64,000 nt of DNA. Origin: Mustelus asterias. Lineage: Eukaryota. Below the pieces are notes generated by a model, which searched no databases, was not told the origin of the DNA, and was given only the letters and a program-made list of their open reading frames with translations. The position numbers were made by a program, and so were the translations under genes. The stretch spans positions 12,214,001 through 12,278,000 of the forward strand of contig NC_135830.1 of the NCBI RefSeq assembly GCF_964213995.1. The letters run 5' to 3'. Position 1 is the stretch's first letter; every line of letters begins with the position of its first letter. Positions 9,049 to 41,269 of this stretch are shown one piece after another.

Positions 9049-9091
9049 ATGGGAATCCTCCTTGTTTTCACCCTATCTGTCTGTTTACCCC
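9049..9091 (+). CDS. NAR-TCR V leader exon (MGILLVFTLSVCLP)
   Basis: ATG at 9049, hydrophobic signal peptide, phase-1 donor GTGAGT at 9092; splices in frame to the acceptor TTCCAG ending at 9239. Confidence 0.9.
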
Positions 9092-9239: not shown

Positions 9240-9527
9240 GATCTTTCAGTCAGTCAGTAACGCAGAGCCCGGCAGCGTTGACCAGGAAGGAGTGTCAGTC
9301 TCTCACCATCACCTGTATCTTTTACGGTCATAATTGGGGCTATTATTTCCAAAATGGATATTTCTTCAGACAAACCCAGACCGGGACGGAGCGGGAGCGG
9401 ATCTCCAGCGGAGGGAGATTTGTTGTGTCTGTGAACAGAGCAAAAAAGACATTTTCGCTGGAAATTCGGGATGTGCGAGTTGAAGACACCGCCACCTATT
9501 ACTGTAAAGCTGATTACTGGTACTACA
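9240..9527 (+). CDS. NAR-TCR V segment (IgNAR-like V domain), intact
   Basis: Translates (R)SFSQSVTQSPAALTRKECQSLTITCIFYGHNWGYYFQNGYFFRQTQTGTERERISSGGRFVVSVNRAKKTFSLEIRDVRVEDTATYYCKADYWYY. Short domain lacking CDR2 strands, IgNAR-type RIS.GGRF..SVN...K.FSL.I.D..VED..TY.CKA motifs, extra FR1 Cys. Confidence 0.93.
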
Positions 9528-9565
9528 CACCGTGATGGGCCTCGACTTCCAGCGATACAAAAGCT
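9528..9565 (+). promoter_or_regulatory. Recombination signal sequence (22-bp spacer) of NAR-TCR V
   Basis: CACCGTG 9528-9534, 22-nt spacer, ACAAAAGCT 9557-9565. Confidence 0.9.
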
Positions 9566-9935
9566 CTCCCTGCAGATTCTCACAGAACCAAATGATAAAC
9601 CGGAGTTAATCTGCCCTGAACACCGCCCACCCCCTCCCCCCTCCACCACCCGCCCCCGGCCAACCCCCCACAATAGCGTCTCATACTCTCTGTTTTAATG
9701 AGACCTGATTACTACCATGAACCTTTTGAGTTTTATAAACACGGAATGTGAGTGGATGGTGGTGTCTTTCCTGGGAATGTTGTCGGTGAATGGAGAATGG
9801 GAATGATTGATCCCAGTTGCAAACCCTCACACCAGATGGGATTCTGGACTCACAGCCCACACTGCGCGCTGTTTAATTAATGTTCCAACATCCCACCCAG
9901 TACCCGAGGTTTTGATACTGAATTGTAACACTGTG

Positions 9936-9954
9936 CAAATGGTTGGGGGGCGGT
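9936..9954 (+). other. NAR-TCR D segment (12/12 RSS), CAAATGGTTGGGGGGCGGT
   Basis: 5' GGTTTTGAT(9908-16)-12-CACTGTG(9929-35); 3' CACAGTG(9955-61)-12-GCAAATACC(9974-82); open in all three frames. Confidence 0.92.
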
Positions 9955-10332
9955 CACAGTGAAAAGGAGCTGAGCAAATACCTGTGCACAATTACAATAT
10001 AAATTCTCAGGGCCCAGATAGTGAATCATTGATTTGATGTTATTTTCGCTGTAATCTGGACTACTGTTACTGTAATCCCCACCATTCCCATCTTTCTTTA
10101 ATTTTTTTTGCGATGTATGAAGTGAATATTTCCTTCCTGCGGCCATTTACTGAGAACTCGGACCTCACAAAGTACAATTTGAACGGACAGAGACTTTGAA
10201 ACAATGAATATTATTTATTAATTTTAAATCCCCCCAAAAATTGGACACTACTGAATGAGTGGTGATGATTTCCCGGCAGATTGAGATGTCGGTGGATCTT
10301 GTACTGAGGAGACTGAGAGCGGTGCCACTGTG

Positions 10333-10385
10333 GGCCGATGATGATTCTGTAGATGGATCCGGGACGGTGGTGACTGTCACAGCCG
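10333..10385 (+). CDS. NAR-TCR J segment (ADDDSVDGSGTVVTVTA)
   Basis: GGATCTTGT(10294-302)-23-CACTGTG(10326-32); IgNAR-J-like DGxGTV.TV motif; phase-1 donor GTAAGT at 10386. Confidence 0.92.
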
Positions 10386-11229
10386 GTAAGTGGTTCCAAA
10401 CCCCGCCGTGTTACAGATTTTATCGTTTAATGTTCCCGATCACTTTATCATTGTGATCTGTCTCGTTTCAATCCAATCCAATCTTCCTGTGGAAAATCAT
10501 CCGTTACAGATTTCGAGTTGGGAGCTGGATGTGATTCTGGAGTCGGGTCCAGGTCAGTCCCGGGAAAAATGTCTGTGAGACCTGATGGAGTCGGCGGTCA
10601 GCGGGACAAGGATAGCGGGGCGAAGCTCGTGCGGGGCGGGGGTGGGGGGGGGGGGGGGTGGGCAGTGGGTTCGGGGTAAAGGGTGGTGAGGCGTGGGGTG
10701 CGGGTGCTCGTGTTAGATGTGATGTGGGAGTTGACAGCATCTGGGAGATTATTGATTGAAAGGGGCACGTCAACATCAAGAACTCTGTCACTTCTGATAG
10801 TTTTTAACAAGCTCAAGTTTACAACACTCCGGAATCCACTCTGGCTACTAAATGTGACTGAGGGAGATCTGTCTGTCGCTTACAACCCGGTGCAGGGTCC
10901 CAGAGCTTTCTCTTGGGCAGTAGATTGCAGTCCTACCCTTGCAATATCAATAGTATACCGGCTGAATGAGATGAATATCACTGCGGCCAATTCATTTAAC
11001 AGCAGCGACTCATTCAATACCTGACCCAGGTGACAAAAAGGAAAATGACACAACGGACTTCAGGTCTAAGTGTACTTATTGGTGGTCCAGAGGAATGTTG
11101 TAATCGAGAAATCAGTGACTGAAATTACTGACGTTGTACCTGATATTTCTTTAAATACCCTCAATTTAACAAATCACTTTTTCTTATTTACCACCGTTAG
11201 TGGTTAGTTCTGGAGCACAAGTCTTCAGT

Positions 11230-12150
11230 AATATTGCCGGGATATTTCCAGGGCCCATAGCCTTTGCAGCATCCAGTGCCTTCAGCCGGTCCTGAAGTCA
11301 CGTGGAGTTAATCAAACTGGATGAAGACTGACATCACTGATGCTGGGGACCTCCGGAGGAGGTCGAGATGCATCACCCACTCGATACCTGTGGATGAAGA
11401 TTGTTGCCAATGGTTTAGCCTTATCTTCAGCAGATTGACAACTCATTTATAGGGACGCCGGGTGTTGCTGCTGGGATTGCCTTCTAAAGTCTTCATTGAC
11501 CAGTGTAACTCCCTCGTTTGCTAATGTCAATGCAGGGGACATGCTGGGCCATGAGGTTACAGATTGTGTTTGAGTACAATTCTGCTGCTGATGGCCCATA
11601 GTGCTTCATGGATGCCGAGCAATGAGTTGCTAGATCTGCTCGAAATCTATTCTATTCGGTCCGGTGACGGTGCCGCACTACAAGATGGAGCGTAGCTCAA
11701 TGTGAAAACAGGACTTTGTGTCCACAAGGATTTTATGTGGCCAGTCCTACTGATACTGCTCTGGTGGTGCAGCTGCGACAGTCAGGTTGCTGAGGGTGAG
11801 GTCAAGTATGCATTATTCCCTCTTGGTAGTTGCCAGTCTAGCACTTATATCTTGCTATGTGCTAGCGAGAGAGTCGTAGCGATGGATATTGAAGTCCCCC
11901 TACCATTATACATTCTGCACCCTCGCAATCCTCAGTCCTTCCTCCATGTGTTGTTCAACATGGAGGAGTGTAGACACATCAGCAGAGGCACGCGGGAATC
12001 AGCAGGTTTCTTTGCCAATGTCTGATCTGATGTAATGAGTCTTCATGCAGTCGAGGGAGGATATTGAGGACTCTCCGGGCAAGTCGCTTCCGATTATATC
12101 CCATTGTGCCGCCAGGTCTGCTGAGTCTGTCCTACCAATGGGTCAGTTTC
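11230..12150 (-). mobile_element. Old degenerate LINE fragment (endonuclease region)
   Basis: Reverse complement of GATATTGAAGTCCCCC near 11885-11900 gives GDFNI; otherwise decayed. Confidence 0.5.
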
Positions 12151-12453
12151 TTGTTGAGGCAGAAGATAAACTGCAACATCACTGAGTGACTGCGTAGCTT
12201 TGAAATGTGGAACAGCCACTCTTGCTTCTATCAGTTGGAAATGTTGCTTCTATGTCTGCATTTCTCAGGAAAGCAATCAGCAACAATCTCTGGACGGGGG
12301 GAACATGCTGGGTCTCTTTTCGTCTAGAGATTGGAGAACAGCAAAGAGGACTCATTGAAATCGTTCAACTAATGAACGGGTTAATGAGATGGATGTGGCC
12401 AAACTATTTATTTTTGGGTATGTCTGGAGCAAGGGGCTATTAACATCTGATAG

Positions 12454-13717
12454 TGTTACGATCCCAGTTGATGTTACTACTGGATGGGAAACTCCCAGGT
12501 GCAACTCTGGCTAGAAATAATGTAGTGTTTTCTTCTGTTTTAGAACAATTGGGGGAATGGAGTAACTGGATGGCCAATTAGCTTTTAGTAACAGAAGAAA
12601 CAAACATTTATTAAACATGAAAAGTTTTACTATGACACAATTCTCCTTCAGCCCAACTCCTCATGACTGTACGCAGACTTTAAGGATAACACAGGTTGCA
12701 AAATATATCTTTGCTATACTGTTCTCCGTAAATGCAGTCCCTGTATAGCAATAGGCCACTGTGGCCAGCTACACCCCATTCCAAAACCTAATTGTCGATG
12801 CCACCCAATCGAATTTCTGTGGATTGCTCCTCACAACCCCGCAGATCATTATACTGATGTGAACCAACTGGCCTCACTGGACTCTGGCATCCACACGAGT
12901 GTTTCCCATTCCCACTCTCGAAAAGTCCTGTCTTGGTAAATTCTACCAAATAACCCTTTGCCTGCGCTATTTTCAGCAAGGATCCACTTCCAGGATTTCG
13001 CACTTTGCTTTCACTATTCCTTTGTCTTGAATTGTCATGTGCATTCAAGTTTCCATACAATCTCAGAGGTATGCAGCCATACCAATACTGCTTCACTGGT
13101 CTCACCAACATCATGATTATATCTGAAAGCTGGCTTGCCAACTTCACCAGGTCTGTGAATTTCAGCTCTGCATTTAGCTGGGGGCCTCTGTCTCTGCCCC
13201 TTTCTTCAACTTTGATAAACAGTACATAGTTCAGTTTCGAGTTCCTTTGGCCCTCTCAATTCAGTTGTCCTGGGACCTTTTTCAATTCCTTGGTTTCTAA
13301 AACGATCTGTTCTTTATTTTCTGGAAGTTCTTTTTTCTCATTGCTCCATTTTATTGCTTCTGCTTCTGGCAGAGCTGTGAGAGGTGCTTTTTGTCTCATT
13401 ACGTATCTCCTACGGCCTTGAGTCCAGTAAAACCCCTTCCTAACATAAAGGTGGCTCCTGGTTCCCAAGCAACAGCCTATTCCTTCTTCACAGCTTTTTA
13501 TTTTTCATGTCATTAACTCCCTCAGCATAATACAGGCACAGTTTAAAATGAACCAAAAACCACATACATGCAAACATCTTTGTTTAATAGCAAGCTAACT
13601 AGAATTTTACCCGACCTTACACAGAAACGCTAAACTAAACTCACTTAAATCTATATCTTATTTCTAATATCCAATAATACAATCACAGACTATATAAACT
13701 ACTTCTGCCTCCTGACA
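12454..13717. mobile_element. Probable solo LTR inside the NAR-TCR J to supporting-Vdelta intron
   Basis: Starts TGT, ends ACA; flanked by 4-bp direct repeat ATAG (12450-53 and 13718-21). Confidence 0.6.
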
Positions 13718-14744
13718 ATAGTGATTCAGAGAAAATCTAAACATTAAGAAGAAGAATTTTAAATATCAGCCAGGAAGAGGAACTCACTGTCACATTGAAT
13801 GTTTGGAGCAGCAGGTATTGACGCATCTATGGGAAGACTTGAAAAGATCCGAGGGAGAACAGATCAGACTGACACAGGGAGCTGGATGGGAAAAATCAAT
13901 TAGAAAACTGAGGGCTGAGGCTGGTCTGGAGTATTTCCACAGACATAAATGAGTGGGCCGAAGTGTCTCTTCTTCTTCTGAAGTTTCTATAAAATGTACA
14001 ACTTAGAGAAAACTCTGCCCAGAGAACCCGGGAGAGAATCAGTTAATGAGCAGAAAAAACGAAATTGTCGGAGATCCAGAAGAGGCAGTTCCCAGTGAGT
14101 AACAGTAAAACCACTGCGGAAACTGAACAGAATGAACGCAACTGGCAACTATGAGACTTTGGGGCATGCTCCCACGACACAAGAAACCCAAGCAGCAAAA
14201 AGTAAATGAAATGAAACTGACTAGATATTTCAATGTTAAGTGAAGGGGAGAAAACATGATACTGACAGAAAATAAACAAATAGATTAAAAAGCAAACACA
14301 GACTCTCAGGAAGTGTTAAACTGAAATAAATGTATGACATTTGACGACCGTTGTTCGGCATGGTTCGGTCCCATTGGAGCTGATGAATCACAGTCATTCT
14401 TTGTTGGATCTTGCTGTATGCTGTGATGTGACGCAGCTGCGTTACTCTCTGACAATCATTTCTGGAAACGGATTGCGTCACTGACAATAAAATGTTCCCT
14501 CGGTTTGTCTCTCAACATGGAAAACTGAAATTGAAACCGAACATATATCGTAAAATCATTTCGTCTGGAAGGGCGACATTCGGCCCCTAGGGTAGATGCT
14601 GCCCCTTTATAAATGAAATCGAATTCTTCCACAAGCCATGAATTTTCCCGATAAACCTGCTGTTTTCCTGTTCATGAATGTGATCGTTGCTCATTCATAA
14701 TTCACTGTTAAACCAGCTCCTACTGAGCTGAAAGTATATTCATG

Positions 14745-15225
14745 GATTCACAGAATTTACTGCAGAAAGACAGGCCCTTCGGTCCAAACTGATCCATGCC
14801 GATCAAAATGCTCATCTAAGCTCAGCCATTTGCCGGCATTTGGCCCATATCTCTCTAAACCTTTCCTATCCATGTATCTGTCCAAATGCCTTTGAAATGT
14901 TGTCAATGTCGCTGCCTCAACCACTTCCTCCGGCAGCTCATTCCATATACGTACCACCCTCTGTGTAAAAAGAAGTTGCTCTGCAGGTTCCCGTTACTTC
15001 TTTCCCTATTCCCTCTTGTTCTCGATTCCCCAACCCTGGGAATAAGACTGAGTTCATTCGCCCTATCCGTGCCTGTTATGATCTTATACACTTCTACAAG
15101 ATCACCCCTCTATCTCCTACGCACCAAAAGAAAAAGTCCAAACTCTCCCTATAACTCAGTCCCTTGAGTCCTGGCAACATCCTTGTAAATCTCTTCTGCA
15201 CTCCCTCCAGTTTAATAACATTGTT
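14745..15225 (-). mobile_element. CR1 3' end fragment
   Basis: Minus ORFs 14757..14957 and 14903..15091 (VRIWNELPEEVVEA, YKII.G.DR). Confidence 0.8.
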
Positions 15226-15418
15226 ACAGATCATTAGAACTTGTGCAAAATAAAATGTCACCTCATTGTACACTGGTTTATAGCGTAAGTCAATATCGTT
15301 CCATTAGAATTAAAATAATAATAACTCCGCATAAAACTGAGCTACTCCTGCGACTGACACAATCTCCAACTAAAAAATGGCAAAACCTAAACAAAACGCT
15401 TTTTTTCTAATCCTGCAG

Positions 15419-15724
15419 ATTCCTCTTCCCTGGTATCCAAGAATCCGCCTCTCCAAATCTCTGCTGCCGATGACACGGTTACATTAAGCTGTGAATATTC
15501 AGGAATCTGTCAGTACACAGTACACTGGTACAGTCAGCCCCCAGGGCAAACTCTGAAATACTTGCTGCAGAAACACACTTCAGGAGGGGACAATAAAGAA
15601 AACGCTGCCGGGGAGAGAATTACTGCTTCTATCGATTCTGTCCAGAAAATCAGCCGGTTAAAGATCTCCAAACTGCAACTAAGCGACTCGGCTGTGTATT
15701 ACTGTGGACTGAGTCAGCACATAG
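15419..15724 (+). CDS. TRDV: Leaderless 'supporting' TCR Vdelta of NAR-TCR, intact
   Basis: Pyrimidine tract plus CTGCAG acceptor ending at 15418, in phase with the NAR-TCR J donor. Translates (D)SSSLVSKNPPLQISAADDTVTLSCEYSGICQYTVHWYSQPPGQTLKYLLQKHTSGGDNKENAAGERITASIDSVQKISRLKISKLQLSDSAVYYCGLSQHI with canonical C, W, YYC and an extra CDR1 Cys. No leader seen upstream. Absent from the ORF track. Confidence 0.92.
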
Positions 15725-15946
15725 CACAGTGATACAGAACACGGAGAGAGCTGTACAAAAACCTGAACATGGCGAGGATTACAGACACAGTGATACAGAA
15801 CACGGAGAGAGCTGCACAAAAACCTGAACATGGCGAGGATTACAGACACAGTGATACAGAACACGGAGGGAGCTGCACAAAAACCTGAACATGGTGAGGA
15901 TTAGAGACACAGTGATACAGAACACGGAGAGAGATGTGCTGAAAAC
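15725..15946 (+). repeat. 61-bp tandem array of 23-RSSs behind the supporting Vdelta
   Basis: CACAGTG at 15725, 15786, 15847 and 15908, each with a 23-nt spacer; ACAAAAACC at 15755, 15816 and 15877; fourth nonamer degenerate (GCTGAAAAC 15938-46). Confidence 0.95.
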
Positions 15947-16423
15947 TTAGTCCTACTCCTTGTCCAACAGGTTCAAGATTCTTGCTCCTGCTGTTGACGA
16001 GGGTGAGGACTGTAGGACAGATGAGCGAAGTGGCCACAGTACCGTGGGCCAGGGAGCCATTCAAGTGGGGTAGGAAGGAGGAATCTAGTCGTAATCGGCG
16101 ATCGTATAGTTAGGGGCACAGACAATGTTCTCTGTGACCAGGAGCGATAGTCCTGTAGATTGTGTTGCCCCCTGGTGCCAGGTTTCGGGTCACCTCCTCA
16201 GGACTGCAGAGAATTCGGAATGGGAGGGGGAAAATCCAGTTGTCATTTTTGACGTATGTACGAATGACATAGGCAGAACAAGGATGCACATTCTGCTAAG
16301 GGAAGATGAATAGCCAGGTTCTAAACTCAAAATCATAACCAAAAAGGTAATAATCTCTGGATTAATATCTGAGCCATGAGCTAACTGGGACACGATTAAT
16401 GAGATTAAAGAGGTAAACGTTTG

Positions 16424-17341
16424 TGTACGGGAAAAAATTCTAATAGGTTAGTAAAGATTTTTAGACATTTAGAAATTAGGACACTGACAGAACTACCAGC
16501 ATTAAGGTAAATGACTTTAAAACAGATTTATAAAGTAACACGAAAGCAGTTTGCACACATATGAAATGCAGTAAGAGATTTAAACAAGTGATTATGATTT
16601 AAAGATTTGAATGTATTAATATATTTTTAAGAATCATTGTTCACTTTAGCCAAAGGCAGTATGCTGCGAAGCATTATGGTAAAGGGTATTAGGGCAGAGC
16701 CATATTCTAAAAAAATATTAAAGCCTTGAGAATATGCAAGTTTCATCAGTAGAGCTTCGAATGGATAGAACATTCAGAACACTTAAACAAATTTTATGAA
16801 TAGGGTATATTCACTGTCCAGATAAAATGGATGCATGCCCAAACGTGGAGTCAAGTTTTAATCTGGTTTGGCAGTGACCTGTAGAGGAACTCATTGGAAC
16901 GTGCCCTTTGAACTTTGGGGCTGGTGTCTGGTTACTATGGGATACAGAAATCTGGGTTAGCCAAGGCAGGAGTTTGCGTCTGAATTCTAAGGACTAAGGA
17001 ACTGCCATTTTGCCAGAAGGTAAGATGTGATTGGCAAAGGTATCTAACATAAATTATTTCTGGTTTAAGTATATTGAAGATGATTGATTTAAAGCTAATG
17101 AAAGGCGGGAGTAATTAATAAGGAAAACTATAATTGGCCTGATTTGAATTGTATACGTCAGATTTCATTGGAGAGGACTAGATGCTCTATATCAGAGCCG
17201 CCCTGACCTTTTAATTATTTCTCTTGGTGGCCGCTGGTCAAAATAAAGGTTACGTCTTTAAACTGAGACACTGGCTTCGTCGGTCTTGTTTTGTCTGAGA
17301 TTTACTGACGGTATCTGGCCACCTCGAAAAACCAACCAACA
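16424..17341 (+). mobile_element. Probable solo LTR inserted in the CR1
   Basis: TG...CA termini, AATAAA near 17242, imperfect 5-bp flanking repeat GTTTG/GTGTG; CR1 sequence resumes after 17341. Confidence 0.5.
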
Positions 17342-18112
17342 GTGTGGCTCATAGTTTCATGTGGGAGAAATGTGTTCGAATTCATGGAATATTAGCACCA
17401 GTATTTGTGCAGGAAGGAGCTGTTGCATCGGTGCGGACTCAATCTGAATCATGCTGGCGAATAACTAGGGCTGTAGATAGGGCTTTAAACTAAATAGTGG
17501 GGTAAGGAGGAATGAGTGTTCAGTTGCATGTAAATAAATTTTAAAATCGAAGTTAAAGGAGAAGGTTGGAGTGAAGGTTAACGATGAAACTGATTGTTAC
17601 CAGAAAATAAAAGGAAGGGACAGAACGTGTGGACATCATAGGACACCAAGAAATCGTGCAAGAATGGGGAAATTTGATAACAGAACAAACTTAAAGGCTT
17701 TGTACCTCACTGCACGAAACTTTGGGAATAAAATTAATGAGTTAATATAGAGAAATATGTATGAATTAATGGCGATTACTGAGACATGGTTGCAGGCAAA
17801 ACTAGATTTGGGAATTGAATATCCAAAGGTACTCAATATTTCAGACGGATAGACGGAAATGAAATGAGATGCTGTAGTAATATTTAGGTCCCCAAACAGT
17901 CGTTTGGCAGTGAAGCATAGTCTAAATGAGGAAATATTGGGGGCTTGTAAGAAAGGTACGTCAATAATCATGGATGATTTTAATATGCATGTAGAGTGGA
18001 TTTATCAAATTGGCAAGGGTAGCCTCGAGGGAAAGTTCATTGAATGTATTAAAGATTGTTTCTTGCAGAAATATGTTGTGGAACCAACGAAAGAGCAGAC
18101 CAATCTTGATTT

Positions 18113-19315
18113 TCCACCCAATGTGGTGGACACGGCTCTCAACCGTGTCCCACACATCTCCCAGGCTACTGCTCTCACACTCTCTCCTCCCTCCCAAAAC
18201 CAGGATAGCATCCGCTTTTTACTCACTTTCCAGCTCACACGCCTCCGCATTAAAAGAATCATCCTCCACCATTTCTGCCAACACCTGCATAATGTTACCT
18301 TTCAACCCAATTTCCCCTCGCTCCCCCTGCCAGTATTTCACAGGGATCATTCCCTCCGGGGCACCCTTTTCCACTTCTTCATCACACCTAGCAACTCACC
18401 CACCGCCACCGGCACTTTTCCATGCTACCATAGAAAATGCTATACCTGCCCCTTCTTCTGCTCCCTCCTCAGCATCTTAGGCTCCAAAAACTCTTTCCCG
18501 GTGAAGGAGCGCTTCACGTGCATCTCCTTTAATCTCGTCTATGGCATTCGCTGCTCGCGATGCTGCCTAATCTACATTGTAGAAAACAATGCAGAGTGAT
18601 TTGCAGAATAATTCTGGTCTGTCCGCAAGCAGGATCCAGATCTTCCTGCAGCTTCGACACACCACCCTGCTCTCCTATCCACACGTCTGTCCTTGCCCTC
18701 TTCCAATGTTCCAGTGAAGCCCAACGTAAAATGAAGGAACAGCACTTCATCTTCAGATTAGACAAATTACAGCCTTCCGGACTGAGGATTGAGTTCAACA
18801 ATTTCAGAGCATGACCTCTCTACTCCACCTCCACGCCATCTTCTTTTCATCGCATTCGTCCATTTTTTTATTATTTTCTACTTTTACTTCTATTTATCAA
18901 CATCTAAAATATCGCTTTTCATTTTACTTCATCTACCCACCCCACTCCCCATTCCACTAAGGATAACTGCCACATTCATAGACTGTGCACTTTCGGTTCT
19001 GCCATTTACACATTCCAATCTCTTAATGGACGCTCTTAGCAACATTCTCAGCCTTGATCATCACCATTTACATTCCCTTTGTCGTTTTGTCTATGCTATT
19101 TGTTTCAATTATAGTTCCCCACCCCCAGAAAAAACCCACGCTCACAGTATAAATCTTGTCCAACTTTCCTTGTCTTCAGCTCTGAGGAAGGGTCACCCTG
19201 ACTCGAAATATTGGCTCGATTCTCCCTCCACAGATGCTGTAAGATCTGCTGAGATTTTTTGAGCATTTTCTGTGTTTCTTTCAGATCCCAACATCAGCAG
19301 TATTTTTTTTTATTA
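18113..19315 (+). mobile_element. Penelope-like element 3' fragment (GIY-YIG region plus terminal repeat)
   Basis: ORF 17904..18599 ends CYTCP...FTC.SFNLVYGIRCSRCCLIYIVE (GIY-YIG-like); ORF 18560..18814 has R..EQHFIFRL..LQPSGL.IEFNNF; diverged ~20-bp duplication of CR1 sequence on both sides. Confidence 0.8.
19178..19216 (+). ncRNA. Minimal type-I hammerhead ribozyme motif in the Penelope terminal repeat
   Basis: AGCT-CTGAGGA-A-GGGTCA-CCC-TGACTC-GAAA-TATT-GGCT: core boxes, 6-bp stem II, 4-bp stem I, short palindromic stem III. Confidence 0.6.
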
Positions 19316-21222
19316 TAGGGAGCAGACTATTCTGGATTTGGCATTGTGTAATCAGCAGGGATTAAATAATGATCTAATAGTTAAGATCCTCTAGCCAAGA
19401 GTGATCATAGTTAGATAGAATTCCAAATTCAGTTTGAGGACGAGAAACTCGAGTCCCACACTAGACTTCTGCAGTTAAACACAGGGAATTACGAAGACAT
19501 GAGGACAAAATTGGCCCGAGTGGACTGGGAAAGAAGACTAAAAGGCAGGACAGTTGATGATCAGTGGCAAATGCTGAAGGGGACAATTAATTCCTCCCAA
19601 CTAAAATACATTCCCATGAGGAATACAGACTGTAAGAGGGGGAGAAATATCCATGGCTAAGCAAGGAAGCTAAAGATAGCATGAAAAGAAAAGCTAATGC
19701 ATATCATATTGCAAAGGCCTGTGGCAGACTGGAGGATTGGGAAACATGTAATGATCAACAATGGGTTACTGAAAAGTAACAAAAAGATCCAAGGTAAATT
19801 ATGAAAGAAAACACGCACAACATTTAAAGAAGTACTGCAAAAGCATCTTAAATATCTAAAAGTGAAGAGTGGAGCGAATGTGATTGTTGGACCCTTGGAG
19901 GATTCGACTAGGGAATTAATCGTGGGGGAAATAGAAATGGTGGAAACTCTCAATCAATAGCTTGCTTCAGTTATCACGCTGGGCAAATCGAGCACCATTA
20001 CAATAGCAACAGGAAATGCAGAGGTAATAGAAAGGAAGGAACTGAGAAAAATGATGATCAATAGTGAAAAAGTGTTAAGCAAACAGTTGGGATTGAAGAC
20101 AGTCAAGTCCCCAGGGCCGAATCACCTACAGCTTATGGTCTTAAAGAAAGTGATAGTAGGCACATTGGTTATAATCTTCCAAAATTTCCTGGATGTGGGA
20201 ACGGTTCCAGTGGGTTGGAAAAAAGATAATATAATGCCCATATTCAAAGCGGGAAGGAGACAGAAGGTATAAAACCAGACACCAGCTAGTTTGACACCTG
20301 TCGTTCTAAAGTTATTAGAATCCATTTTTAAGATTGTAGTAACGGGACAATTAGAATGCCAAAATGCAATCCATTAGGGTCAGCATGGTTTTACGAAGGG
20401 CAAATCGTTTTGACTAATTTGCTAGAGTTCTTCGAAGATGTAACAAGCAAAGTGGACACTGGGGATCCTGTAGATATGGTATATCTATACTTTCAGAGGG
20501 CCTTTGTTAAGGTACCATACCTTGAAATGCAAAAGATAGTGTGTGTATGCGTGCATGCGCGCGTCCGAGTGTGTGTGTGTGTGTGAGTATGTATGTGAAA
20601 TAAGAAGAGAGTCCAACAGAGGGAGATTGCTGGAAGTGAGAGACTCTGTGTGTATCTGTGTCTGTGTGCTTGTGTTTGGGTATGACTGCCTTCTTGCGAG
20701 TCTTGCCTTTTCGCTGCAATTAATCTTTTACACCGTGCCGCTATTTAATGATCACAGCCGTGTTTCTGCAACGCCCTTCTGAAAAGATTTCAGAAGTAAC
20801 TACTGTGTTCCAAAGCAAAGCAGGAGATTGCTGATGGAGAAATTCTTATTTCTTCCATCAGGTGGCAGGAAAGCCAACAAAATGTCCACCCCCACCTCTT
20901 GGTGTCTCTGTTTCACTGTCCTCTATCACACTCTTATCTCTCAATTCCAATGCCTGTATCAATGTGTTCGGTCTCACTTTCATTACAGTGGACACAGTGA
21001 CAACGCAGTCTAAGACGCTGCTCCTAATTGTCGCATTCTCCATTGACTCCACTCTTGTTACAGATGTTTTGGTAATACATCGTGTACAAACAAGCTGGCT
21101 GCATAGTTCCAATTTCGGTGGAAGCCTAATAACTGCACTTCCTCTTCAGGCCTGTTCCTCACTATAAAGAAGCGAGTCAAGATATATTGTACTATTCTAC
21201 CCATTGCAAATACAACTTGCAG

Positions 21223-22335
21223 ATGGATCACCCACGAGGGTTAAAAGCTTTCATTCTAGCAGCAATCATATCAGGTGAGTTACACTTCACATTCTCATTG
21301 ATTACCTCTCAAGAAAGCCTTTTATTCTTCCACATTTAATGTTGCTTTTAGAGAAAAAGTAGAGCAATATTCGCAGTGGTTGGATTTAATTAATTATTAG
21401 GGGCGGCATTTTGGCACAATGTTTAGCACTGCTGCCTCACAGCGCCAGGGACCCGGATTCGATTACCGGCTTGGGTCACTGTGCAGAGTCTGCACGTTCC
21501 CCCCATGTCTGCGTGAGTTTCCTCTGGGTGCTATGTTTTCCTCCTGCAGTCCGAAACATGTGCTGATTAGGTGCATTGGCCGTGCTATTCTCTCCCTCAG
21601 TGTAATAGAACAGGCGCTGGAGCGTGGCGACAGTAACTTCATTGCAGTGTTAATGTAAGCCCACTTGTGACACTGATAAATCAACTTAATTTAGTTATTC
21701 TCATTGATTTCCTTTCAATAAATTATTTTATATTCTTATATTTAATGTTGATCTTTCGAGATAAGTACACAGCAACATTACTGGTGACTGAGTTTATTTA
21801 ATGATTGGAATTTTACAAATAGTTATTTAAAAGCTTCAGTAGTGAGAAAAGGCAGTGGGAACTGGGGCCAACCTCCATTGGGCACACCCCATCCTCCCCC
21901 TCCCCCGCAGCTCCCCAGTTTCAAATCGATAGAGTGCCTGGAACCTCCACTTAATTCTAATTTTCTCTATCCTTCAGGTAGCCTGGCTGCATCCGCAGTC
22001 ATCCACCAGCCGGAGGCAGAGGTGAGGGTCCAACAGGGAGCCACCACGACAATCACCTGCTCATACACAGAGGTGGAGAGAGCTTGCTTGGTCTGGTACC
22101 GGGAACCTCTCCACCCAGCCATGGGAGGGAGTCCCGAGTATATTGTCGTCCGCTGCACCGATGGTTTCAGTGACAGCGCCACATTTTCCAGGCGTCGCTT
22201 TTCCTCCTCCCTGAGCAAAACTTACAGAATCATCAGTCTGACAGTTGCACCGGTGACAGCTGTGACTCCAGGAAATACTTCTGCATCTTAAACACACACA
22301 CTCGCACATTCCAGGCAGCAGCCTCTACGTAAACT
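21223..22335 (+). pseudogene. TRDV: TCR Vdelta/alpha-type V with a single frameshift (leader 21223-21274; V exon 21978-22296; weak 23-RSS 22297-22335)
   Basis: Leader MDHPRGLKAFILAAIIS with GTGAGT donor; TATAAA at 21163. Exon reads AVIHQPEAEVRVQQGATTTITCSYTEVERACLVWYRE...; frameshift near 22260 puts DSRKYFC out of frame; CACACTC-23-ACGTAAACT. Confidence 0.8.
21398..21685 (+). mobile_element. HE1-like tRNA-derived SINE (related copies at about 22805-23045 +, 24200-24415 -, 36800-37135 +, 58318-58680 -)
   Basis: GGCACA.TG.TTAGCACTGCTGCCTCAC A-box head, GG.TTCGA B-box, TGCACGTTCTCCCCGTGTCTGCG core shared among the copies. Confidence 0.8.
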
Positions 22336-24021: not shown

Positions 24022-24797
24022 ATGAGGTTAACAATGTTACTCGGACTATTGGAGGGTTCCTTCTGCAGTGAGCTGCTTGACATTTCCCCAAATTCCTGCT
24101 GTGTGTGTTTGCTGAACCTCACCTTTCAATGGTATGTTACAGGGGAAGGAATCATCATAAAATCCCAACAGTGAGAAGGAGGCAATTTCACCATTGAGTT
24201 TGCACCCAGGCCCACTCTGCCATGTCCCCGTAACCCTTACTAATCACCTAATCGAGACATCTACCGATATTTAGGAACACCTAGCGTGCATATCTTTGGA
24301 CTGTGGAAGGAAATTGGAGCATTCAGAGGAAACCCACGCAGGCACGGGGAGAACGTCTAAACTCCACACAGATAGTACTCAGGCCTGGAATAAAAACCAC
24401 TGTGCCACCGATCCGCCCATCACGATAATGGATGTCTCTTTGACTTTAACAGGTGTCCAGTCGGAAGTAGTTCTGACGCAGCCAGAGGCAGAGAAGTGGT
24501 TCCCAGTGTAGTCCCTGTCCCTGACCTGCAATACCAGCGGCTTCGACTTCAGTGGCTATTGGCTGTACTAGTACTGTCATGGTACCTGAAAGAGGCCAGA
24601 CTGGCTAGTTTCCTACTATGATGAAGACTTCCATTGATACTGTGGGGAGACTCGAGGACGATTCACTGTTTCCAAAGAGCTTGCACACAATATATTTGCT
24701 TTGGATGTCAGGTTTCTGACGATGGAGGAAACAGCTGCTTATTGGAGTACACAGTTAACACAGTGAGGCGGGTCAGCCCCAGATTTGTAAAAAGAAC
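24022..24797 (+). pseudogene. IgH-like V pseudogene (leader 24022-24067; V exon 24453-24758; RSS 24759-24797)
   Basis: Leader MRLTMLLGLLEGSFC; exon SVQSEVVLTQPEAE...LTCNTSGFDFSGYWLY*...GRFTVSKE...NIFALD with four in-frame stops and the second Cys lost; CACAGTG-23-AAAAAGAAC. Confidence 0.88.
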
Positions 24798-26465: not shown

Positions 26466-26517
26466 ATGAGCATGGCGCTAGCAATATCTCTCGGTCTGTT
26501 TATTGGCTTCTTATCCT
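26466..26517 (+). CDS. Leader exon of the IgH-like V (MSMALAISLGLFIGFLS)
   Basis: ATG at 26466/26472, hydrophobic core, phase-1 GTGAGT donor at 26518; resembles shark IgH leaders ending VQS. Confidence 0.88.
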
Positions 26518-26636
26518 GTGAGTAGTTGGATATTCTCAGAAAGTTCCCATAGTCTCTGTTTAACATTAATCATTCCCTGTGGCGTGACACAAACTGGATT
26601 CACCTCACCATAATTATTGTTTCTTTCGGTTAGCAG

Positions 26637-26941
26637 GCGTCCAGTCGGATGTGGTGTTGACCCAGCCAAAGGCAGAGACGGGGATAATAGGGCAAACCCT
26701 GACCCTAACCTGTAAAACCAGTGGATTTGATCTTGGGAGATACACCATGCTTTGGTACCGACACAGTCCCGGGAAGGGACCGGGCTGGCTCCTTTGGTAC
26801 TACAATGAAAATAGCAAGAATTACAATCCGGAGTTTGGTGAACGAATCACTGCGTCCAAGTACCTTTCCAACAGTGTATTCGCGCTCTCTATTAGGACTT
26901 TAACAATGGGAGACAGCTCTACGTATCACTGTGCACAACGG
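26637..26941 (+). CDS. IgH-like V segment (IgW-V/TAILV-type) in the TCRdelta locus, open, with 23-RSS
   Basis: CVQSDVVLTQPKAETGIIGQTLTLTCKTSGFDLGRYTMLWYRHSPGKGPGWLLWYYNENSKNYNPEFGERITASKYLSNSVFALSIRTLTMGDSSTYHCAQR; CACAGTG(26942-48)-23-ACACAAACC(26972-80). Confidence 0.9.
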
Positions 26942-33316: not shown

Positions 33317-35043
33317 AAGATTCATAGAGTCAGACTCTGTCATTGTGAATTCTATTGGTAGGTTATGTAGCTCCTCATCCGCGTGTTAAGTGTAATTCTA
33401 CTGTGACGCTTTTATATCGGAAGTACCATTTAATTATGACGAAGGGAATTTCAATGGAAAGTAGGACAGGAATTAGCACATCTTGCATTTAGAATTTCTG
33501 CATCCCCAGTATCTCGAAGGGGATGGCAAAAATAAATTTTGCATCGGTTTATCACATTACGTGTAAAACGAGAACTTTAACAATCCTCTACTTTGTCCGC
33601 TATTCAGCTTCACTTGGGTGTGCAGATATCGCCATGCCTTTGTTACCCCTGTATTCGCCTATTCAAGTTTTATATCCCACATTCCTCACTGCATTAACTT
33701 CAGTTGGTCCAAACTATTATATCCAGAACTTCACTCCCTCCAAGTCTGGCTGATACAGGAGCTGCCGTAGTGTCACTGTCAGGTTGCTCTATTAGCGATT
33801 AGCCAGAGGCACGGGCTTTCTGCACGTGGGTTCAAATCTCACCATGGCTAGTTATTTGAATTGCAGCTCAAGTCTTAAACGTGGAAGGGAAGGTTTTATT
33901 TTCAGTAATGTTCACTGTGAATCTGGTTCAATTATTCTTTTTAACGTTATCTACCAACCTTACGTAGTCTGACTGTAAATCGACAGTGATGGACAGGCAT
34001 CTGGAATGACTTAACAATCCGATTCGATTTTATTTAATTTGCTTTAAAATTGTCACATATATTCGTACACAGTGAAAAGTATTGTTTCTTGCATCATATG
34101 CAGACAAAGCATACCGTTCATAGAGAAGGAACGGAGACAGTGCAGAATGCATTTTTACAGTCATAGACTAAGTTCAACTTAGTGCAAGGTAAGTCCATTC
34201 AAGAGTCTGATTGGAGCAGGAAAGAAGGTGTTCTTGAGTCGGTTGTTATGTGTCCTCAAACTTTTGTATTCCTTTCCCGACGGAAGAAATTGGAAGAGAG
34301 TACATCCGGGGTGTGTGGGTTCCTTGATTATGCTGGCTGCTTTTTCGAGGCAGCAGGAAGTGTAGACTGTTTCAATGGATGGGAGGCTGGTTTGCTTGAC
34401 CGACTGGGCTTCGTTCATGGCCCTTTGTAGTTCGAATCCATTCAGTTCAGGGCAATTGGGAATGTCAGCGACAAAGTCATTCCATTACATACTTAGTAAA
34501 AACCAAAACCATATTGGCTTCTGGGTAAACATCGGGATTCCCGTCATTCTCATCAAATCCCTCGATACTTGCTCTTCTCACCATCTTTGTAACCTTCTCC
34601 AACCTGTATGCCTTTCAGTCTGTTGTTGCTCCAGTTTTAGCCTTTTGAAAGTGTGCGTAATTCCTCTGGGCCCCTCAATCCGCGAGCGTGCCTTCAAGAG
34701 CCTTGTACCTGAGCTGGAGAATTCTCGACGTTAACCACTCACCGCCGCCCCCGTCCACCTGCTCTGTTTACCTACCTCCATTCCTTTAACAATGTTCCTG
34801 AAATCTTACCTCACCCTCAAAACATCCTGCTGGTCATCTAACCCCATAGCTTCTCTGTGCAAAATATTTTTTTAGCCAGCGCTCGTATGAAATCCTATGG
34901 ACCGTTTTACTCGGGTTTTATAGGAGTGGAATTGATGTCTGCATTTATCAGCGAGATTCTGCTCTCGGAGGTGACGTTATACATCTGAAAGCAGCAGCAG
35001 CAACAGCTGCTGACGAGTTTTTGTGCTGGCATGTATCACTGTG

Positions 35044-35061
35044 GGGGATATACGGTGGAGC
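35044..35061 (+). other. TRDD: TCR Ddelta segment (12/23 RSS), GGGGATATACGGTGGAGC
   Basis: AGTTTTTGT(35016-24)-12-CACTGTG(35037-43); CACAGTA(35062-68)-23-ACAATAACC(35092-100); open in all three frames. Confidence 0.93.
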
Positions 35062-35310
35062 CACAGTAGCTGAATCTCCCTTAACGCCCGTACAATAACC
35101 TCCCAGCCTCACAGGAGTGCACCAACCTCTCTCAATAGCACCCCTCTCAGCCCACTCCCAGCCGCTGACCCCCATCCCCACCGTGATGTTGACCGAGTTT
35201 ATCATATTACTGGTCTGACCCAACCCTAATCAAATCAGTCGGACACACGACAGAGAGAAAGGGTGGTGAACGGGACCGCAATAGATCTTCTTATTGGATC
35301 AAACCCTGTG

Positions 35311-36771: not shown

Positions 36772-37629
36772 GTGAGTAGAATCTATTGGCATCAATTACG
36801 GGTGTCACGGTGGCACAGTGGTTAGCACTGCTGCCTCACAGCTCCAGCAATCCAGGTTCGAATCCAGGCTTGGGTTACTGTCTGTGTGGAGGTTGCACGT
36901 TCTCCCCGTGTCTGCGTGGGTTTCCGCCAGATTCTCTGGTTCCTCTCACAGTCCAAAGATGTGCGGGCTATGTTTATTGGTCATGCTGAATTGCCCATTA
37001 GTGTCAGGGAATGTGTAGGTTAGAGGGATTAGTGGGGTAAATTTGTGGGAATAGGTCCTGGGGTGGGATTGTTGTCGGTGCAGACTCGATGGGCCGAATG
37101 GCCTCCTTCTACACTGTAGGGATTCTATGATCTATGAATTTGAGAAGATTCATTTTGCACTCAGAAGTTTTTGGCCTCATTGCAAAAGTGGGGAGAAAAT
37201 TTGCCATTGTGACAAACGAACCTGATGAATTATACAATGATGAAGGAATGTGTCCTTTTCCACTTGCACATAAAGAAGTTCCTCACACAACTAAGTATCT
37301 CACACGTACCAACTATTGATACCACAATACTTCAAAGAATAGTGATCCAACTTTTTTTAAAAAAAGAAAACAATATTTCCTAATGCCAGACTGATTCCGG
37401 GATAGCAGGATTATTAGCTTTGTTTCTCTCTCGACACGTGCTGCCAGACGTACACAGTTTATCCAGAATTGTCTCTTTCTAATTTGCTATTTAATCGGTC
37501 GCACCTGTTTTGAGGGCAGATCGGTCATAAAATTATGCTAAGAGCATGTACTCCCCAGGGTTCTGAAATAGCTGAAGTCTCTGTGGCCTGCCCCAGTGGA
37601 AGCTTTCTGCTTGGGCAATAGTCACTGTG

Positions 37630-37692
37630 TGTATATTGCTGATAATGAAAAACTGATATTCGGCAGCGGCACCCGACTGCAGGTTGTGCCAA
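37630..37692 (+). CDS. TRDJ: Jdelta-3 (YIADNEKLIFGSGTRLQVVP)
   Basis: GCTTTCTGC-12-CACTGTG, FGSG, GTAAGT donor. Confidence 0.92.
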
Positions 37693-39251
37693 GTAAGTGC
37701 GAGTCCACCTTCATTTCCTCCCATTAGATACAGATTTCTGCTGAATGGTGTCGGGTGAAAGGCCGGTAAAGAGCCAAGGCAGTGCTTGGAATGAAGGAGA
37801 AGCCATTGCACCAATCAATTAAGCTATTAGGCACCGAGTATCGAGGTCAGCTCACTGTTCATTAAGCCGTGTCATCAACACCAGTTGAAACATTAGGCAT
37901 CAGTGATGTGACATCGAACTGAAATTGGGTTACTAATAGGATAGAAAATGCCCATTTAGCAGGTTGAGTCAAATGCCCACTGATTTGAGTAATTATCTAC
38001 ATATATTTCATTTTCAAGCTTGTCTTTGTTAAAACTAATAATCTTGCTAAAACTATACAAGGTACGATTTAGACCACATCTGGAACACTGTCCCCTTACA
38101 TTAGGAAACCTATACTGGCATTGGAGGCAGTTCAGGGAAGGCCACTACTTTGATCCCAGGTATGGATATGTTTTTTCGGAGAGTTTGAGTATGTTGGGCC
38201 TCTACTTAGTGGAGTTTAGAAGCATGCGATGTGACCTTATTGAGACTTATTGGATTCTCAGGGGACATGACAAGGTTAGATGCTGAGACGTTATTACCTC
38301 TTGTAGGACCAGAGGTCATAATCCCAAAGTATGAGGTTGCCCATTTATATGATGAAGATTTTCTTCTTTCAAGCCAGCAGTGAATCTGTGGAATCATTTA
38401 CCGCAGAGAGCTGTACAGGTTGAATGTTCAGATTTTTAACCCACAGGGCAATCGAGGGTTACGAGGATACAACGGGAAAGAGGTATTCAGAATTATCACA
38501 TCAGCTAATTCATGATCTCATTGAATGACCGATGGGCCAAATGGCATCCTTCTGCCCCGTCGTCCTATGGTCTCCGGTCTTTGTTAAACTGCTGACACGA
38601 ATGCATGCTTGAAATAAGGCTTCAAAGTGAAATGTTGGTCAACGATTATCAACAACAGGTTGATGTTTTGAACCAGGTGTTATAGTTCAAATTAAAGGGT
38701 CACTCCTTTAAAGACAGATATGAGGAGACTTTTTTCTCTCTTAAAGAGTAGTGAGTCTCGTCATCTCTCTTCTTCAAACATCAAGGGGAACAGGGCCTTT
38801 GATTATTTTAAACACAGCTAGATAGATTCTTGATTAACAAGGGATAAACGGTGATCGGGAGTAGGCAGGAATGTGGGGGTGAGGTTACAATCAGATCAGT
38901 CATGATCTTACTGAATAGCGGTTAGGCTAGAGTGGCCAGTGCCTTACTCCGACTCCCACTTTGCATGTTCGTATGTGTTGATGTCAAACTTTTTTCCCAG
39001 GATTTGTGTCTCCTGGGTGTTCAGGGAGAAGTACCGGTGAAGATGGAAATTGTGAAACACAGTCAATTCATTATCCAAATATTGTTCCCTGATATAGTCA
39101 AAAAAACAGTGGGAGCTAAGTGTGAGGGAGAGGGAGGGAACGGTTATATTTGGTTCAGGAGAGAAGCTAATTAAAAGAAGTGACATGATACAAACTGAAT
39201 GTGAGCTAGCCCTGTGTTCATATGGCTGGGTCGATATTTTGTTGTAGCTGT

Positions 39252-40660: not shown

Positions 40661-41269
40661 GCCAGAACATTGATTACAGGAGTTGGGACGTTTTGTTGAA
40701 GTTGTACAAGACATTGGTAAGGTCACATTTGGAATACTGTGTACAATTCTGGTCACCCGATTATAGAAAGTATATTATTAAACTAGAAAGAGTGCAGAAA
40801 AGATTTACTAGGATGCGACCGGGACTTGATGGTTTGAGGCTGGATAGACTGGGACTTTTTTATCTGGAGTGTAGAAGATTGAGGTGTGATCTTTAGCGGT
40901 TAATAAAATAATGAGGGGTATAGATCAGCTCGATAGTCAGTTTCTTTCCCCAAAGGTAGGGACGTCTAAAACTAGAGGGCATAGGTTTATGGTGAGAGGG
41001 GCGAGATACAAATGTGTCCAGAGCGGCAATTATGTCACGCAGAGGGTGGTGAATGTCTGGAACAAGCTGCCAGAGGTAGTAGTAGAGGCGGGTACAATTT
41101 TGTCTTTTAGAAAGCATTTAGACAGTTATATTGGTAAGATGGGTACAGAGGAATATGGGCCAAATGCAGGCAATTGGGATTAGCTTAGGGGTTTAAAAAA
41201 AGGCTTCATAGACAAGTTAGGCCGAAGGGCCTGTTTCCATGCTGTAAACCTCTATGAATCTCTGACTCT
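40661..41269 (+). mobile_element. 5'-truncated CR1 inserted into a Jdelta RSS heptamer
   Basis: ORFs 40567..40896 and 40911..41183; TSD ATGATTG at 40654-60 and 41270-76. Confidence 0.85.

What the first reader, a model, noticed from the sequence alone, without database searches (positions are those of the whole stretch)
15725..15946. Tandem array of four 23-RSSs on the NAR-TCR supporting Vdelta
Seen: the V's RSS is amplified as a 61-bp unit. Three copies are perfect CACAGTG-23-ACAAAAACC and a fourth has a perfect heptamer with a damaged nonamer. The copies differ by point changes, which argues against a simple assembly stutter. Read-through past heptamer 1 hits an in-frame TGA (15730-32), so joins at copies 2-4 are non-productive but leave upstream RSS copies on the chromosome. 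Inference: the array could (a) raise RAG loading on a V that must co-rearrange with the NAR VDJ, (b) allow stepwise secondary rearrangement, with RSS1 re-joining a downstream 12-RSS Jdelta to give D-less junctions, or (c) act as a decoy that lowers use of this cassette. A CR1 begins right after copy 4, so the array may be a by-product of that insertion. I know of no description of such an RSS array, but could not search.
Basis: partly seen in the sequence, partly recalled or inferred. Interest (0 to 1): 0.85.

Follow-up and report, generated by a model that had tools for sequence, protein, structure and literature searches.

The report
Tandem RAG signals behind shark V
A shark T-cell-receptor V segment is followed by three perfect copies, plus one broken copy, of the DNA signal that tells the RAG enzyme where to cut; this looks like a trait of the whole gene family, and its function is not yet known.

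Summary
A 61-bp unit made of a consensus 23-RSS plus 22 bp of flank is repeated about 3.5 times at 15725-15937, starting at the coding end of an intact, leaderless V exon with a Cys in CDR1 (15419-15724). That exon lies 5 kb downstream of a NAR-TCR V-D-J. Three copies are perfect, and they are the only perfect consensus RSSs in the window. The fourth copy keeps the heptamer and has a 5-of-9 nonamer. An in-frame TGA sits at 15730-32.

Contigs from four public runs (three samples of the same species and one of another species label) put the unit at many times single-copy depth. They include unit variants absent from this window and contigs that appear to cross a unit-to-unit junction. So this is not an assembly stutter, although the copy number at this locus is unproven.

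This scan's unchecked notes report the same 61-bp arrays, with 3 to 9 copies, behind other supporting V-delta segments of this genome. The scan has therefore found this before on other DNA.

My best reading (0.5) is a minisatellite inherited across the family and kept uniform among its copies. Only the first RSS gives productive joins. The distal copies are competent competitors, and joins at them are dead but can be re-edited. A selected function (0.22) is not excluded. The idea that the array is a by-product of the CR1 insertion is unlikely. I found no description in the searchable literature; the primary NAR-TCR papers were not held.

The parts
9049..9091 (+). NAR-TCR V leader exon (ATG at 9049, donor GT at 9092)
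   Evidence: Read from the sequence.
9240..9527 (+). NAR-TCR V exon. It has a Cys in the a-b loop, no Trp at the WYRK position, and an imperfect RSS with a spacer of about 22-24 bp (nonamer 9557-9565).
   Evidence: Sequence. Pfam V-set E=4.2e-8 for 9242-9526.
9936..9954 (+). NAR D segment flanked by 12-RSSs (9908-9935 and 9955-9982)
10333..10385 (+). NAR J segment with an upstream 23-RSS (10294-10332), ending in phase 1 before a GT donor
15419..15724 (+). Supporting V-delta exon. A splice acceptor sits directly at the exon, there is no leader, CDR1 carries a Cys, and the frame is open and in phase with the NAR J.
   Evidence: Pfam V-set E=1.4e-13.
15725..15785 (+). Unit 1: perfect 23-RSS (15725-15763) plus 22-bp flank. 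This is the only copy whose cleavage gives an in-frame V end.
15786..15846 (+). Unit 2: perfect 23-RSS (15786-15824) plus flank
15847..15907 (+). Unit 3: perfect 23-RSS (15847-15885) plus flank, with 3 point differences from unit 2
15908..15946 (+). Unit 4, partial. The heptamer is perfect and the first 30 bp match unit 1 at 29 of 30. The nonamer position matches the consensus at 5 of 9.
15950..20600 (+). Decayed non-LTR (CR1/L2-like) retrotransposon remains. An esterase-like piece lies at 16110-16310, an endonuclease-like piece at 17868-18150 and an RT-like piece at 19961-20583. The limits are approximate.
   Evidence: all weak.
35016..35100 (+). D-delta (35044-35061) with a 5' 12-RSS and a 3' 23-RSS. 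It is the nearest legal partner for the array.
37602..37693 (+). J-delta with a 12-RSS (37602-37629), an FGSG motif and a splice donor

Best explanation
The array is a real germline minisatellite. A 61-bp segment consisting of the supporting V-delta's own 23-RSS plus 22 bp of flank was tandemly duplicated in an ancestor of the supporting-V family. It was then carried along as the NAR-TCR cassettes multiplied. Unequal exchange kept the copies alike and let the copy number drift, while selection on the working RSS kept the shared sequence close to consensus.

In lymphocytes only unit 1 lies against the coding end, so only a cut there gives a usable V. Units 2 and 3 are equally good RAG targets. 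They should therefore take a share of the cuts and yield V-plus-61 or V-plus-122 joins that stop at the TGA of 15730-32. Such joins keep one or two intact 23-RSSs upstream on the chromosome. A second, 12/23-legal join to a remaining downstream 12-RSS (a J segment) can then replace them.

The net effect is a modest decoy cost that is partly repaired by editing. I see no evidence that the array was selected for its own sake.

Shown here: the anatomy, the multi-copy state in independent runs, and the legal partner signals downstream. Inferred: the origin, the homogenisation, and every statement about RAG usage.
For: The array, the perfect signals and the point differences come.

Read evidence: in run X2, intron contigs match the window with 0-2 other letters over 314-568 bp at depth 24-32. 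The array bin 15716-15912 sums to 1031, the V-exon bins to 364-517 and the flank bin to 1137. At 15773 every contig laid carries T, not the window's C (13, 22, 13 and 35 contigs in X1, X2, X3 and X6). These contigs run 44, 36, 30 and 25 letters to their nearer end, which is enough to reach from nonamer 1 across the flank into heptamer 2. So the unit is multi-copy, in tandem, and also present under a second species label.

The other Vs of the window carry one RSS each (24759, 26942). The unit occurs nowhere else in the 64 kb.

Unchecked scan notes list 61-bp 23-RSS arrays of 3 to 9 copies behind other supporting V-delta segments of this genome. That agrees with the depth ratio.

All 4 variable columns among units 1-3 fall in the spacer or the flank. 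Chance alone gives this 30% of the time, so nothing demands selection.

One X6 contig shows a unit with a shortened nonamer (joint 15756 to 15882 with 1 letter between). That is what drift would produce.
Against: No read spans this array, so its copy number here rests on the assembly alone.

Summed contig depth is not a copy number, as the tool itself warns. Part of the depth could come from a satellite unrelated to V genes.

I could not read any paralogue or orthologue. The family-wide claim therefore rests on depth plus unchecked notes.

Persistence of many intact consensus signals across paralogues and into a second species label could equally reflect selection.

The array begins within 0-6 bp of the RAG cleavage site. 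That is roughly a 1-in-23 to 1-in-4 coincidence given that the unit must contain the RSS, so a simple slippage origin may not be the whole story.

No RNA or rearranged DNA was available to show which heptamers are actually cut.
Confidence: 0.5

Rival explanations
1. The array is a selected device of the supporting V-delta family. These V segments have no leader or promoter of their own and must rearrange on the same chromosome as the NAR V-D-J. Several consensus 23-RSSs in a row would raise the chance that RAG captures the segment. They might also provide built-in second attempts, because failed joins at distal copies leave RSS1 available for a further join.
For: In this window only the supporting V carries an array, and its three signals are the window's only perfect consensus RSSs. 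The unit is multi-copy in two species labels. The scan's unchecked notes report arrays behind other supporting Vs, mostly with complete signals. The partner 12-RSSs needed for re-joining exist downstream.
Against: Two of every three equally good cuts would be wasted on stop-containing joins. All arrays may descend from one event, so their number is not independent support. There is no excess conservation of heptamer or nonamer within this array (P=0.30). No usage data exist.
Confidence: 0.22
2. The array was seeded by RAG activity in the germline rather than by replication slippage. The repeat starts at, or within a few bases of, the heptamer-coding border, which is where RAG cuts. Cartilaginous fish are known to carry germline-rearranged receptor genes.
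For: The base before heptamer 1 differs from the base before heptamers 2-4, so the period begins at the cleavage site. A paper titled 'Rearrangement of Immunoglobulin Genes in Shark Germ Cells' (PMC2193156) appeared in the listing. I saw only its title and the start of its abstract.
Against: With a one-base gap, the last 5-6 bases of the V resemble the end of the unit. That fits an ordinary microhomology duplication and blurs the boundary. No known RAG reaction yields head-to-tail signal copies with a 22-bp filler. It is a single coincidence.
Confidence: 0.08
3. The copy number at this locus is an assembly error. Arrays exist in the genome, but this one has been collapsed, expanded or borrowed from a paralogue.
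For: No listed contig bridges the array. At 15716 and 15773, none of the contigs laid from X1, X2 or X3 carries the window's own letter.
Against: The copies differ at 4 positions in a consistent pattern. The intron next to the array is matched without differences by X2 contigs. Unit-to-unit junctions are present in all four runs.
Confidence: 0.1
4. The array is a by-product of the neighbouring retrotransposon insertion.
For: A decayed non-LTR element starts within a few tens of bases of the truncated fourth unit.
Against: The unit is multi-copy and, according to the notes, is found behind other supporting Vs. The missing 31 bp of unit 4 is nowhere else in the window. Retrotransposon insertion does not create 61-bp target repeats.
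Confidence: 0.03

Closest known systems
Canonical single 23-RSS of a TCR or Ig V segment
   Same: Unit 1 is a textbook signal: a consensus heptamer flush with the coding end, a 23-bp spacer and a consensus nonamer, facing a D with a 12-RSS downstream.
   Different: The signal plus 22 bp is repeated head to tail, so two further perfect signals and one damaged one follow the working one. The other Vs in the window have one signal each.
Secondary-rearrangement signals (the cryptic heptamer inside VH used for VH replacement; the Ig-kappa deleting element). Both are recalled, not tested.
   Same: An extra RAG target in cis lets a failed or unwanted join be replaced by a second recombination.
   Different: Those are single, partial or isolated signals, each in a fixed role. 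Here full consensus signals are stacked behind the V, and a retained upstream copy would do the editing. No usage is shown.
Ordinary minisatellite
   Same: It has a 61-bp head-to-tail unit with 96% matches. According to unchecked notes, the copy number differs among paralogous loci.
   Different: The unit is itself a complete enzyme target placed at the one position where that enzyme acts.
12-RSS-like tandem arrays noted elsewhere in this genome (unchecked scan notes)
   Same: They are tandem amplification of RSS-like units inside TCR V clusters of the same genome.
   Different: They have a different spacer class, much higher copy numbers (10 to 58 by the notes) and are not attached to a coding end. 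I did not see them.

Membership tests
RAG recombination signal sequence, 23-spacer class | Heptamer CACAGTG directly abutting a coding segment | tested here: met
   Unit 1's heptamer (15725-15731) follows the last V codon position. Units 2-4 have the heptamer but abut 22 bp of filler, not a gene segment.
RAG recombination signal sequence, 23-spacer class | Spacer of 23 bp (give or take 1) and an A-rich nonamer close to ACAAAAACC | tested here: met
   Units 1-3 have 0 mismatches. Unit 4's nonamer matches 5 of 9.
RAG recombination signal sequence, 23-spacer class | Cleaved by RAG and joined to a 12-RSS partner in lymphocytes | not testable with these tools
   No RNA holder and no rearranged DNA were found. 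Legal partners exist at 35016-35043 and 37602-37629.
NAR-TCR associated (supporting) TCR-delta V | Lacks a leader peptide (feature as stated in passages of PMC1845163) | tested here: met
   A splice acceptor sits directly at 15418/15419 and is in phase with the phase-1 end of the NAR J at 10385. I saw no leader-like exon in the 200 bp upstream; that check was by eye.
NAR-TCR associated (supporting) TCR-delta V | Conserved cysteine in CDR1 (PMC1845163 passages) | tested here: met
   The translation shows a Cys six residues after the canonical first Cys and before the conserved Trp.
NAR-TCR associated (supporting) TCR-delta V | Sits downstream of a NAR-TcRV that has a leader, a Cys in the a-b loop and no Trp in the WYRK motif (PMC1845163 passages) | tested here: met
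   The leader is at 9049-9091 and the V exon starts at 9240. A Cys precedes the first canonical Cys, and Phe stands in place of Trp. Pfam V-set E=4.2e-8.
NAR-TCR associated (supporting) TCR-delta V | Expressed as a three-domain delta chain spliced from NAR J to this V | not testable with these tools
   No run on record as RNA holds the stretch. Among the 15 joints shown (174 more were not shown), none joins 10385 to 15419.
Minisatellite | Head-to-tail copies of a 10-100 bp unit | tested here: met
   period 61, 3.4 copies, no indels.
Minisatellite | Copy number varies among loci or individuals | tested here: inconclusive
   This rests only on unchecked notes of 3 to 9 copies at other loci and on differing array-to-V depth ratios between runs.
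CR1/L2-type non-LTR retrotransposon (the flank) | Endonuclease and reverse-transcriptase domains in one orientation | tested here: inconclusive
   Pfam Exo_endo_phos_2 E=0.014, 15.7 bits against a cut-off of 27.4. Four further flank pieces, including the RT-like ones, gave either no Pfam hit or only unrelated hits at E of 0.056 or worse. The atlas gives RVT_1 only at rank 8 and an SGNH/GDSL esterase lead at 0.89.

The most novel reading that the evidence does not exclude
Stacked consensus 23-RSSs may be a lineage-specific, selected feature of the NAR-TCR supporting V-delta family. On this reading they form a multi-signal landing pad that makes RAG capture promoter-less V segments more often. 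They would also build receptor editing into the segment, because a join at a distal copy leaves a proximal signal for a second, D-less join. The array might even have been seeded by germline RAG cutting at the heptamer border.
Probability: 0.2. Interest if true: 0.85.

Novelty: new variant of a known kind. Interest (0 to 1): 0.6.

Why it matters
How RAG chooses among competing signals, and how far signal dosage rather than chromatin sets V usage, is normally studied with artificial substrates. Here nature appears to provide a series of otherwise similar V segments followed by 3 to 9 identical consensus signals at a fixed 61-bp spacing. This occurs in a receptor that needs two rearrangements on one chromosome. 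If the distal copies are cut, their products should be directly visible in thymus DNA. These would be V ends extended by 61 or 122 bp, signal joints starting at heptamer 2 or 3, and D-less secondary joins. That would measure signal competition and editing in vivo. If the distal copies are never cut, something about position next to a coding end matters more than the consensus sequence. Either outcome is informative. If the array is only a drifting repeat, it is still a caution for automated V-gene annotation, which may pick the wrong heptamer.

Tried and rejected
Assembly stutter. I rejected this as a general explanation. The copies differ at 4 positions, and four independent runs hold unit variants and unit-to-unit junctions. 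It is not rejected for the exact copy number at this locus.

Transposon-borne repeat. The unit is not found elsewhere in the window, and the flank has no second copy in the window to define the element's end. The remainder of unit 4 is not present beyond the element.

Paralogue and orthologue DNA. One protein search with the V exon gave 2 hits among 2 candidates. A junction pattern found 0 stretches in metagenome contigs. The protein scan of metagenome contigs matched 262 stretches, none confirmed by tblastn. A nonamer-plus-flank pattern found 0 in genome contigs, which holds only bacteria and archaea, and 0 in viral contigs. So I read no paralogous array myself.

Selection test within the array. 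It has 4 variable columns, none in the heptamer or nonamer, giving P=0.30. The test has no power.

Literature. Searches for 'tandem RSS', 'RSS array', 'tandem recombination signal', 'multiple RSSs', 'duplicated RSS' and 'tandemly repeated RSS' gave 10 papers, 9 of them listed. I opened the two immunology hits as passages (PMC9248892; PMC4315296); both were irrelevant. Searches on NAR-TCR terms listed no paper on signal arrays. I read passages of PMC12227049, PMC1845163 and PMC6795676. None mentions repeated signals. The primary NAR-TCR papers (Criscitiello 2006, Ott 2021, Deiss 2019) are not held, and supplements are closed. 'Not described' therefore means not found in these searches only.

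RNA evidence. No listed holder is on record as RNA.

Full report
WHAT IS THERE

Tandem Repeats Finder gives a 61-bp period, 3.4 copies, 96% matches and no indels at 15725-15933. Each unit is a heptamer, a 23-bp spacer and a nonamer (39 bp) followed by 22 bp of flank.

Units 1-3 (starting at 15725, 15786 and 15847) match the consensus 23-RSS with no mismatch. They are the only perfect consensus 12- or 23-RSSs on either strand of the 64-kb window. At up to 3 mismatches the window has 8 matches against 0.76 expected, and 0 of 100 shuffles reach that number.

Units 1 and 2 differ at one spacer position. Units 2 and 3 differ at one spacer and two flank positions. Unit 4 (starting at 15908) matches unit 1 at 29 of its first 30 positions and at 11 of the next 31. 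Its nonamer position matches the consensus at 5 of 9.

CONTEXT

The array starts at the end of an open V exon, 15419-15724 (Pfam V-set E=1.4e-13). This exon has a splice acceptor in place of a leader and carries a cysteine in CDR1.

Five kilobases upstream lies a NAR-type V with a leader (9049-9091). Its V exon starts at 9240 (V-set E=4.2e-8). It has a cysteine before the first canonical cysteine and no tryptophan at the WYRK position. A D segment flanked by 12-RSSs lies at 9936-9954. A J segment with a 23-RSS lies at 10333-10385 and ends in phase 1, in frame with the downstream V.

These are the features that passages of PMC1845163 give for NAR-TcRV and its associated TcR-delta V. The label 'NAR-TCR supporting V-delta' therefore passes every test I could run. 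Expression could not be tested, because no run on record as RNA holds the stretch.

Downstream are two further Vs, each with a single signal. One, with its RSS at 24759, has an exon that by eye carries stop codons. The other is a VH-like V with its RSS at 26942. A D-delta lies at 35044-35061 with a 12-RSS and a 23-RSS. A J-delta with a 12-RSS starts at 37630, and more J segments start at 48288 and 49126.

IS THE ARRAY REAL?

I laid contigs of four public runs on 10200-16100. Run X2 is the same species: eight listed intron contigs of 314-568 bp carry 0-2 other letters at depth 24-32.

In X2 the summed depth is 364-517 over the V exon, 1031 over the array bin (15716-15912) and 1137 over the next bin. 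In X6, which has another species label, listed contigs differ from the window by 106 of 1448 letters, and the same bins read 89-134, 2525 and 633.

At 15773, in the 22-bp flank, every contig laid carries T where units 1 and 2 of the window have C. That is 13, 22, 13 and 35 contigs in X1, X2, X3 and X6. The best of them run 44, 36, 30 and 25 letters to their nearer end. That is enough to cover nonamer 1, the flank and heptamer 2.

I read this as follows. The unit exists in many copies and variants, it is arranged head to tail, and it is present in three samples of this species and in a relative. The tool warns that summed depth is not a copy number, so I use it only for the statement 'many times single copy'.

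Results that weigh against my reading:
- No listed contig bridges the whole array.
- At 15716 and 15773, none of the contigs laid from X1, X2 or X3 shows the window's own letter.
- The count of 3.5 units at this locus therefore rests on the assembly alone.

EARLIER NOTES OF THIS SCAN

Four look-ups list at least eleven other first-reader notes in the same genome. They describe 61-bp-period arrays of 23-RSSs behind supporting V-delta segments, with 3, 3, 3, 3, 5, 5, 5+6, 5+4 and 9 copies. One lies about 37 kb beyond this window's end.

Other notes describe arrays of 10 to 58 signals resembling 12-RSSs near V clusters. All these notes are unchecked AI readings of DNA I could not see. They agree with the depth evidence, which I had before I read them (note), but they are not independent proof.

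HOW IT MOST LIKELY WORKS

Only heptamer 1 abuts the coding end. Reading on in the V frame meets TGA at 15730-32, so any join made at heptamer 2 or 3 is dead.

By established knowledge of V(D)J recombination, RAG cuts at the heptamer border of any accessible, good RSS that pairs with a signal of the other spacer class. Units 2 and 3 are as good as unit 1 by sequence. I therefore infer that they compete.

A join at a distal heptamer leaves one or two intact 23-RSSs upstream. A remaining 12-RSS downstream, such as the one at the J-delta or at later J segments, could then be joined to one of them. That would delete the dead join and produce a V-J junction without a D. This step is legal under the 12/23 rule, but nothing shows that it happens.

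ORIGIN

The simplest history has three steps:
- One tandem duplication of the RSS plus flank occurred in the ancestor of the family.
- The array then spread as the cassettes duplicated.
- Unequal exchange changed copy numbers and kept the units alike.

The fourth unit breaks off after 30 bp. Its remainder is nowhere in the window.

A decayed + strand non-LTR element follows. The evidence for it is weak: a Pfam endonuclease hit at E=0.014, below the cut-off; an SGNH/GDSL esterase lead at 0.89; and an RVT_1 lead at rank 8. The element may have truncated the array, but it cannot have created a repeat that is found genome-wide.

The period starts at the heptamer border, because the base before heptamer 1 differs from the base before heptamers 2-4. 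That border is also the RAG cut site. Given that the unit must contain the whole RSS, the coincidence is about 1 in 23. However, with a one-base gap, the last 5-6 bases of the V resemble the end of the unit. That fits microhomology-based duplication and blurs the point. I keep a germline-RAG origin as a low-probability rival.

SELECTION OR DRIFT?

Within this array, none of the 4 variable columns hits the 16 heptamer and nonamer positions. Chance gives that 30% of the time, so the test has no power. One X6 contig shows a unit with a shortened nonamer, as drift would produce.

Several facts keep a selected role alive, at about 0.2:
- Many consensus signals persist across paralogues and into a second species label.
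- In this window the array is restricted to the one V class that lacks its own promoter.

Both facts are also expected from common descent with homogenisation.

COMPARISON WITH WHAT IS KNOWN

Unit 1 is an ordinary 23-RSS. Stacked complete signals behind one V are not something I could find described. Six phrases for such arrays returned nothing relevant. Four NAR-TCR searches and three sets of passages gave nothing either.

The primary NAR-TCR papers were not held, and supplements are closed. A mention there cannot be excluded.

In working terms, the nearest known things are secondary-rearrangement signals such as the cryptic heptamer used in VH replacement and the kappa deleting element. I recall these and did not test them. 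They differ in being single and imperfect.

VERDICT

The stutter worry is largely removed, and the CR1 by-product idea is unlikely. The functional ideas are legal but untested. The array is a new variant of a known kind. It is of real interest to people who study RAG targeting, because it makes signal competition testable in a natural locus. For now it is best read as an inherited, homogenised minisatellite.

Noticed in passing
window 12216-13981: One contig each in X1 and X2 joins 12215 to 13982, with 56 and 51 letters on the shorter side and one letter between in X2. Some allele or paralogue of the NAR-J to V intron therefore lacks this 1.77-kb piece, which is probably an insertion here.
   Followed up: no
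window 14731-15321: A very high-copy repeat lies directly upstream of the supporting V exon, with summed depth up to 216,626 in X2 against about 30 for unique sequence. Diverged copies lie at 1016-1429, 40772-41260 and 53859-54263.
   Followed up: partly
window 9-798: A 66-bp tandem repeat of 12 copies with 83% matches sits at the start of the window.
   Followed up: no
window 26466-26980: An apparently intact VH-like V with a leader and a single 23-RSS (one nonamer mismatch) is the V nearest to D-delta. The scan noted it as s1-892510.
   Followed up: partly
window 24450-24797: A VH-like V exon carries in-frame stop codons (read by eye) and a 23-RSS with 3 mismatches. It is probably a pseudogene.
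   Followed up: no
window 21984-22291: A V-domain-like open frame after a splice acceptor has no recognisable RSS behind it.
   Followed up: no
window 15764-15785 and 15825-15846: On the minus strand, the 22-bp flank of units 1 and 2 holds a 9-mer that fits the YY1 core consensus as I recall it. The commoner genomic variant (T at 15773) and unit 3 weaken the match. This was noticed by eye after the fact and probably means nothing.
   Followed up: no
window 48260-48340 and 49098-49190: Two further J segments with 12-RSSs, FG.G motifs and splice donors lie 10 kb beyond the J-delta. They could serve as partners for secondary joins.
   Followed up: no
other pieces of the same genome (not seen): Scan notes report tandem arrays of 10 to 58 signals resembling 12-RSSs beside clusters of V segments with 23-RSSs. 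If real, they would be legal partners for the 23-RSS arrays.
   Followed up: no
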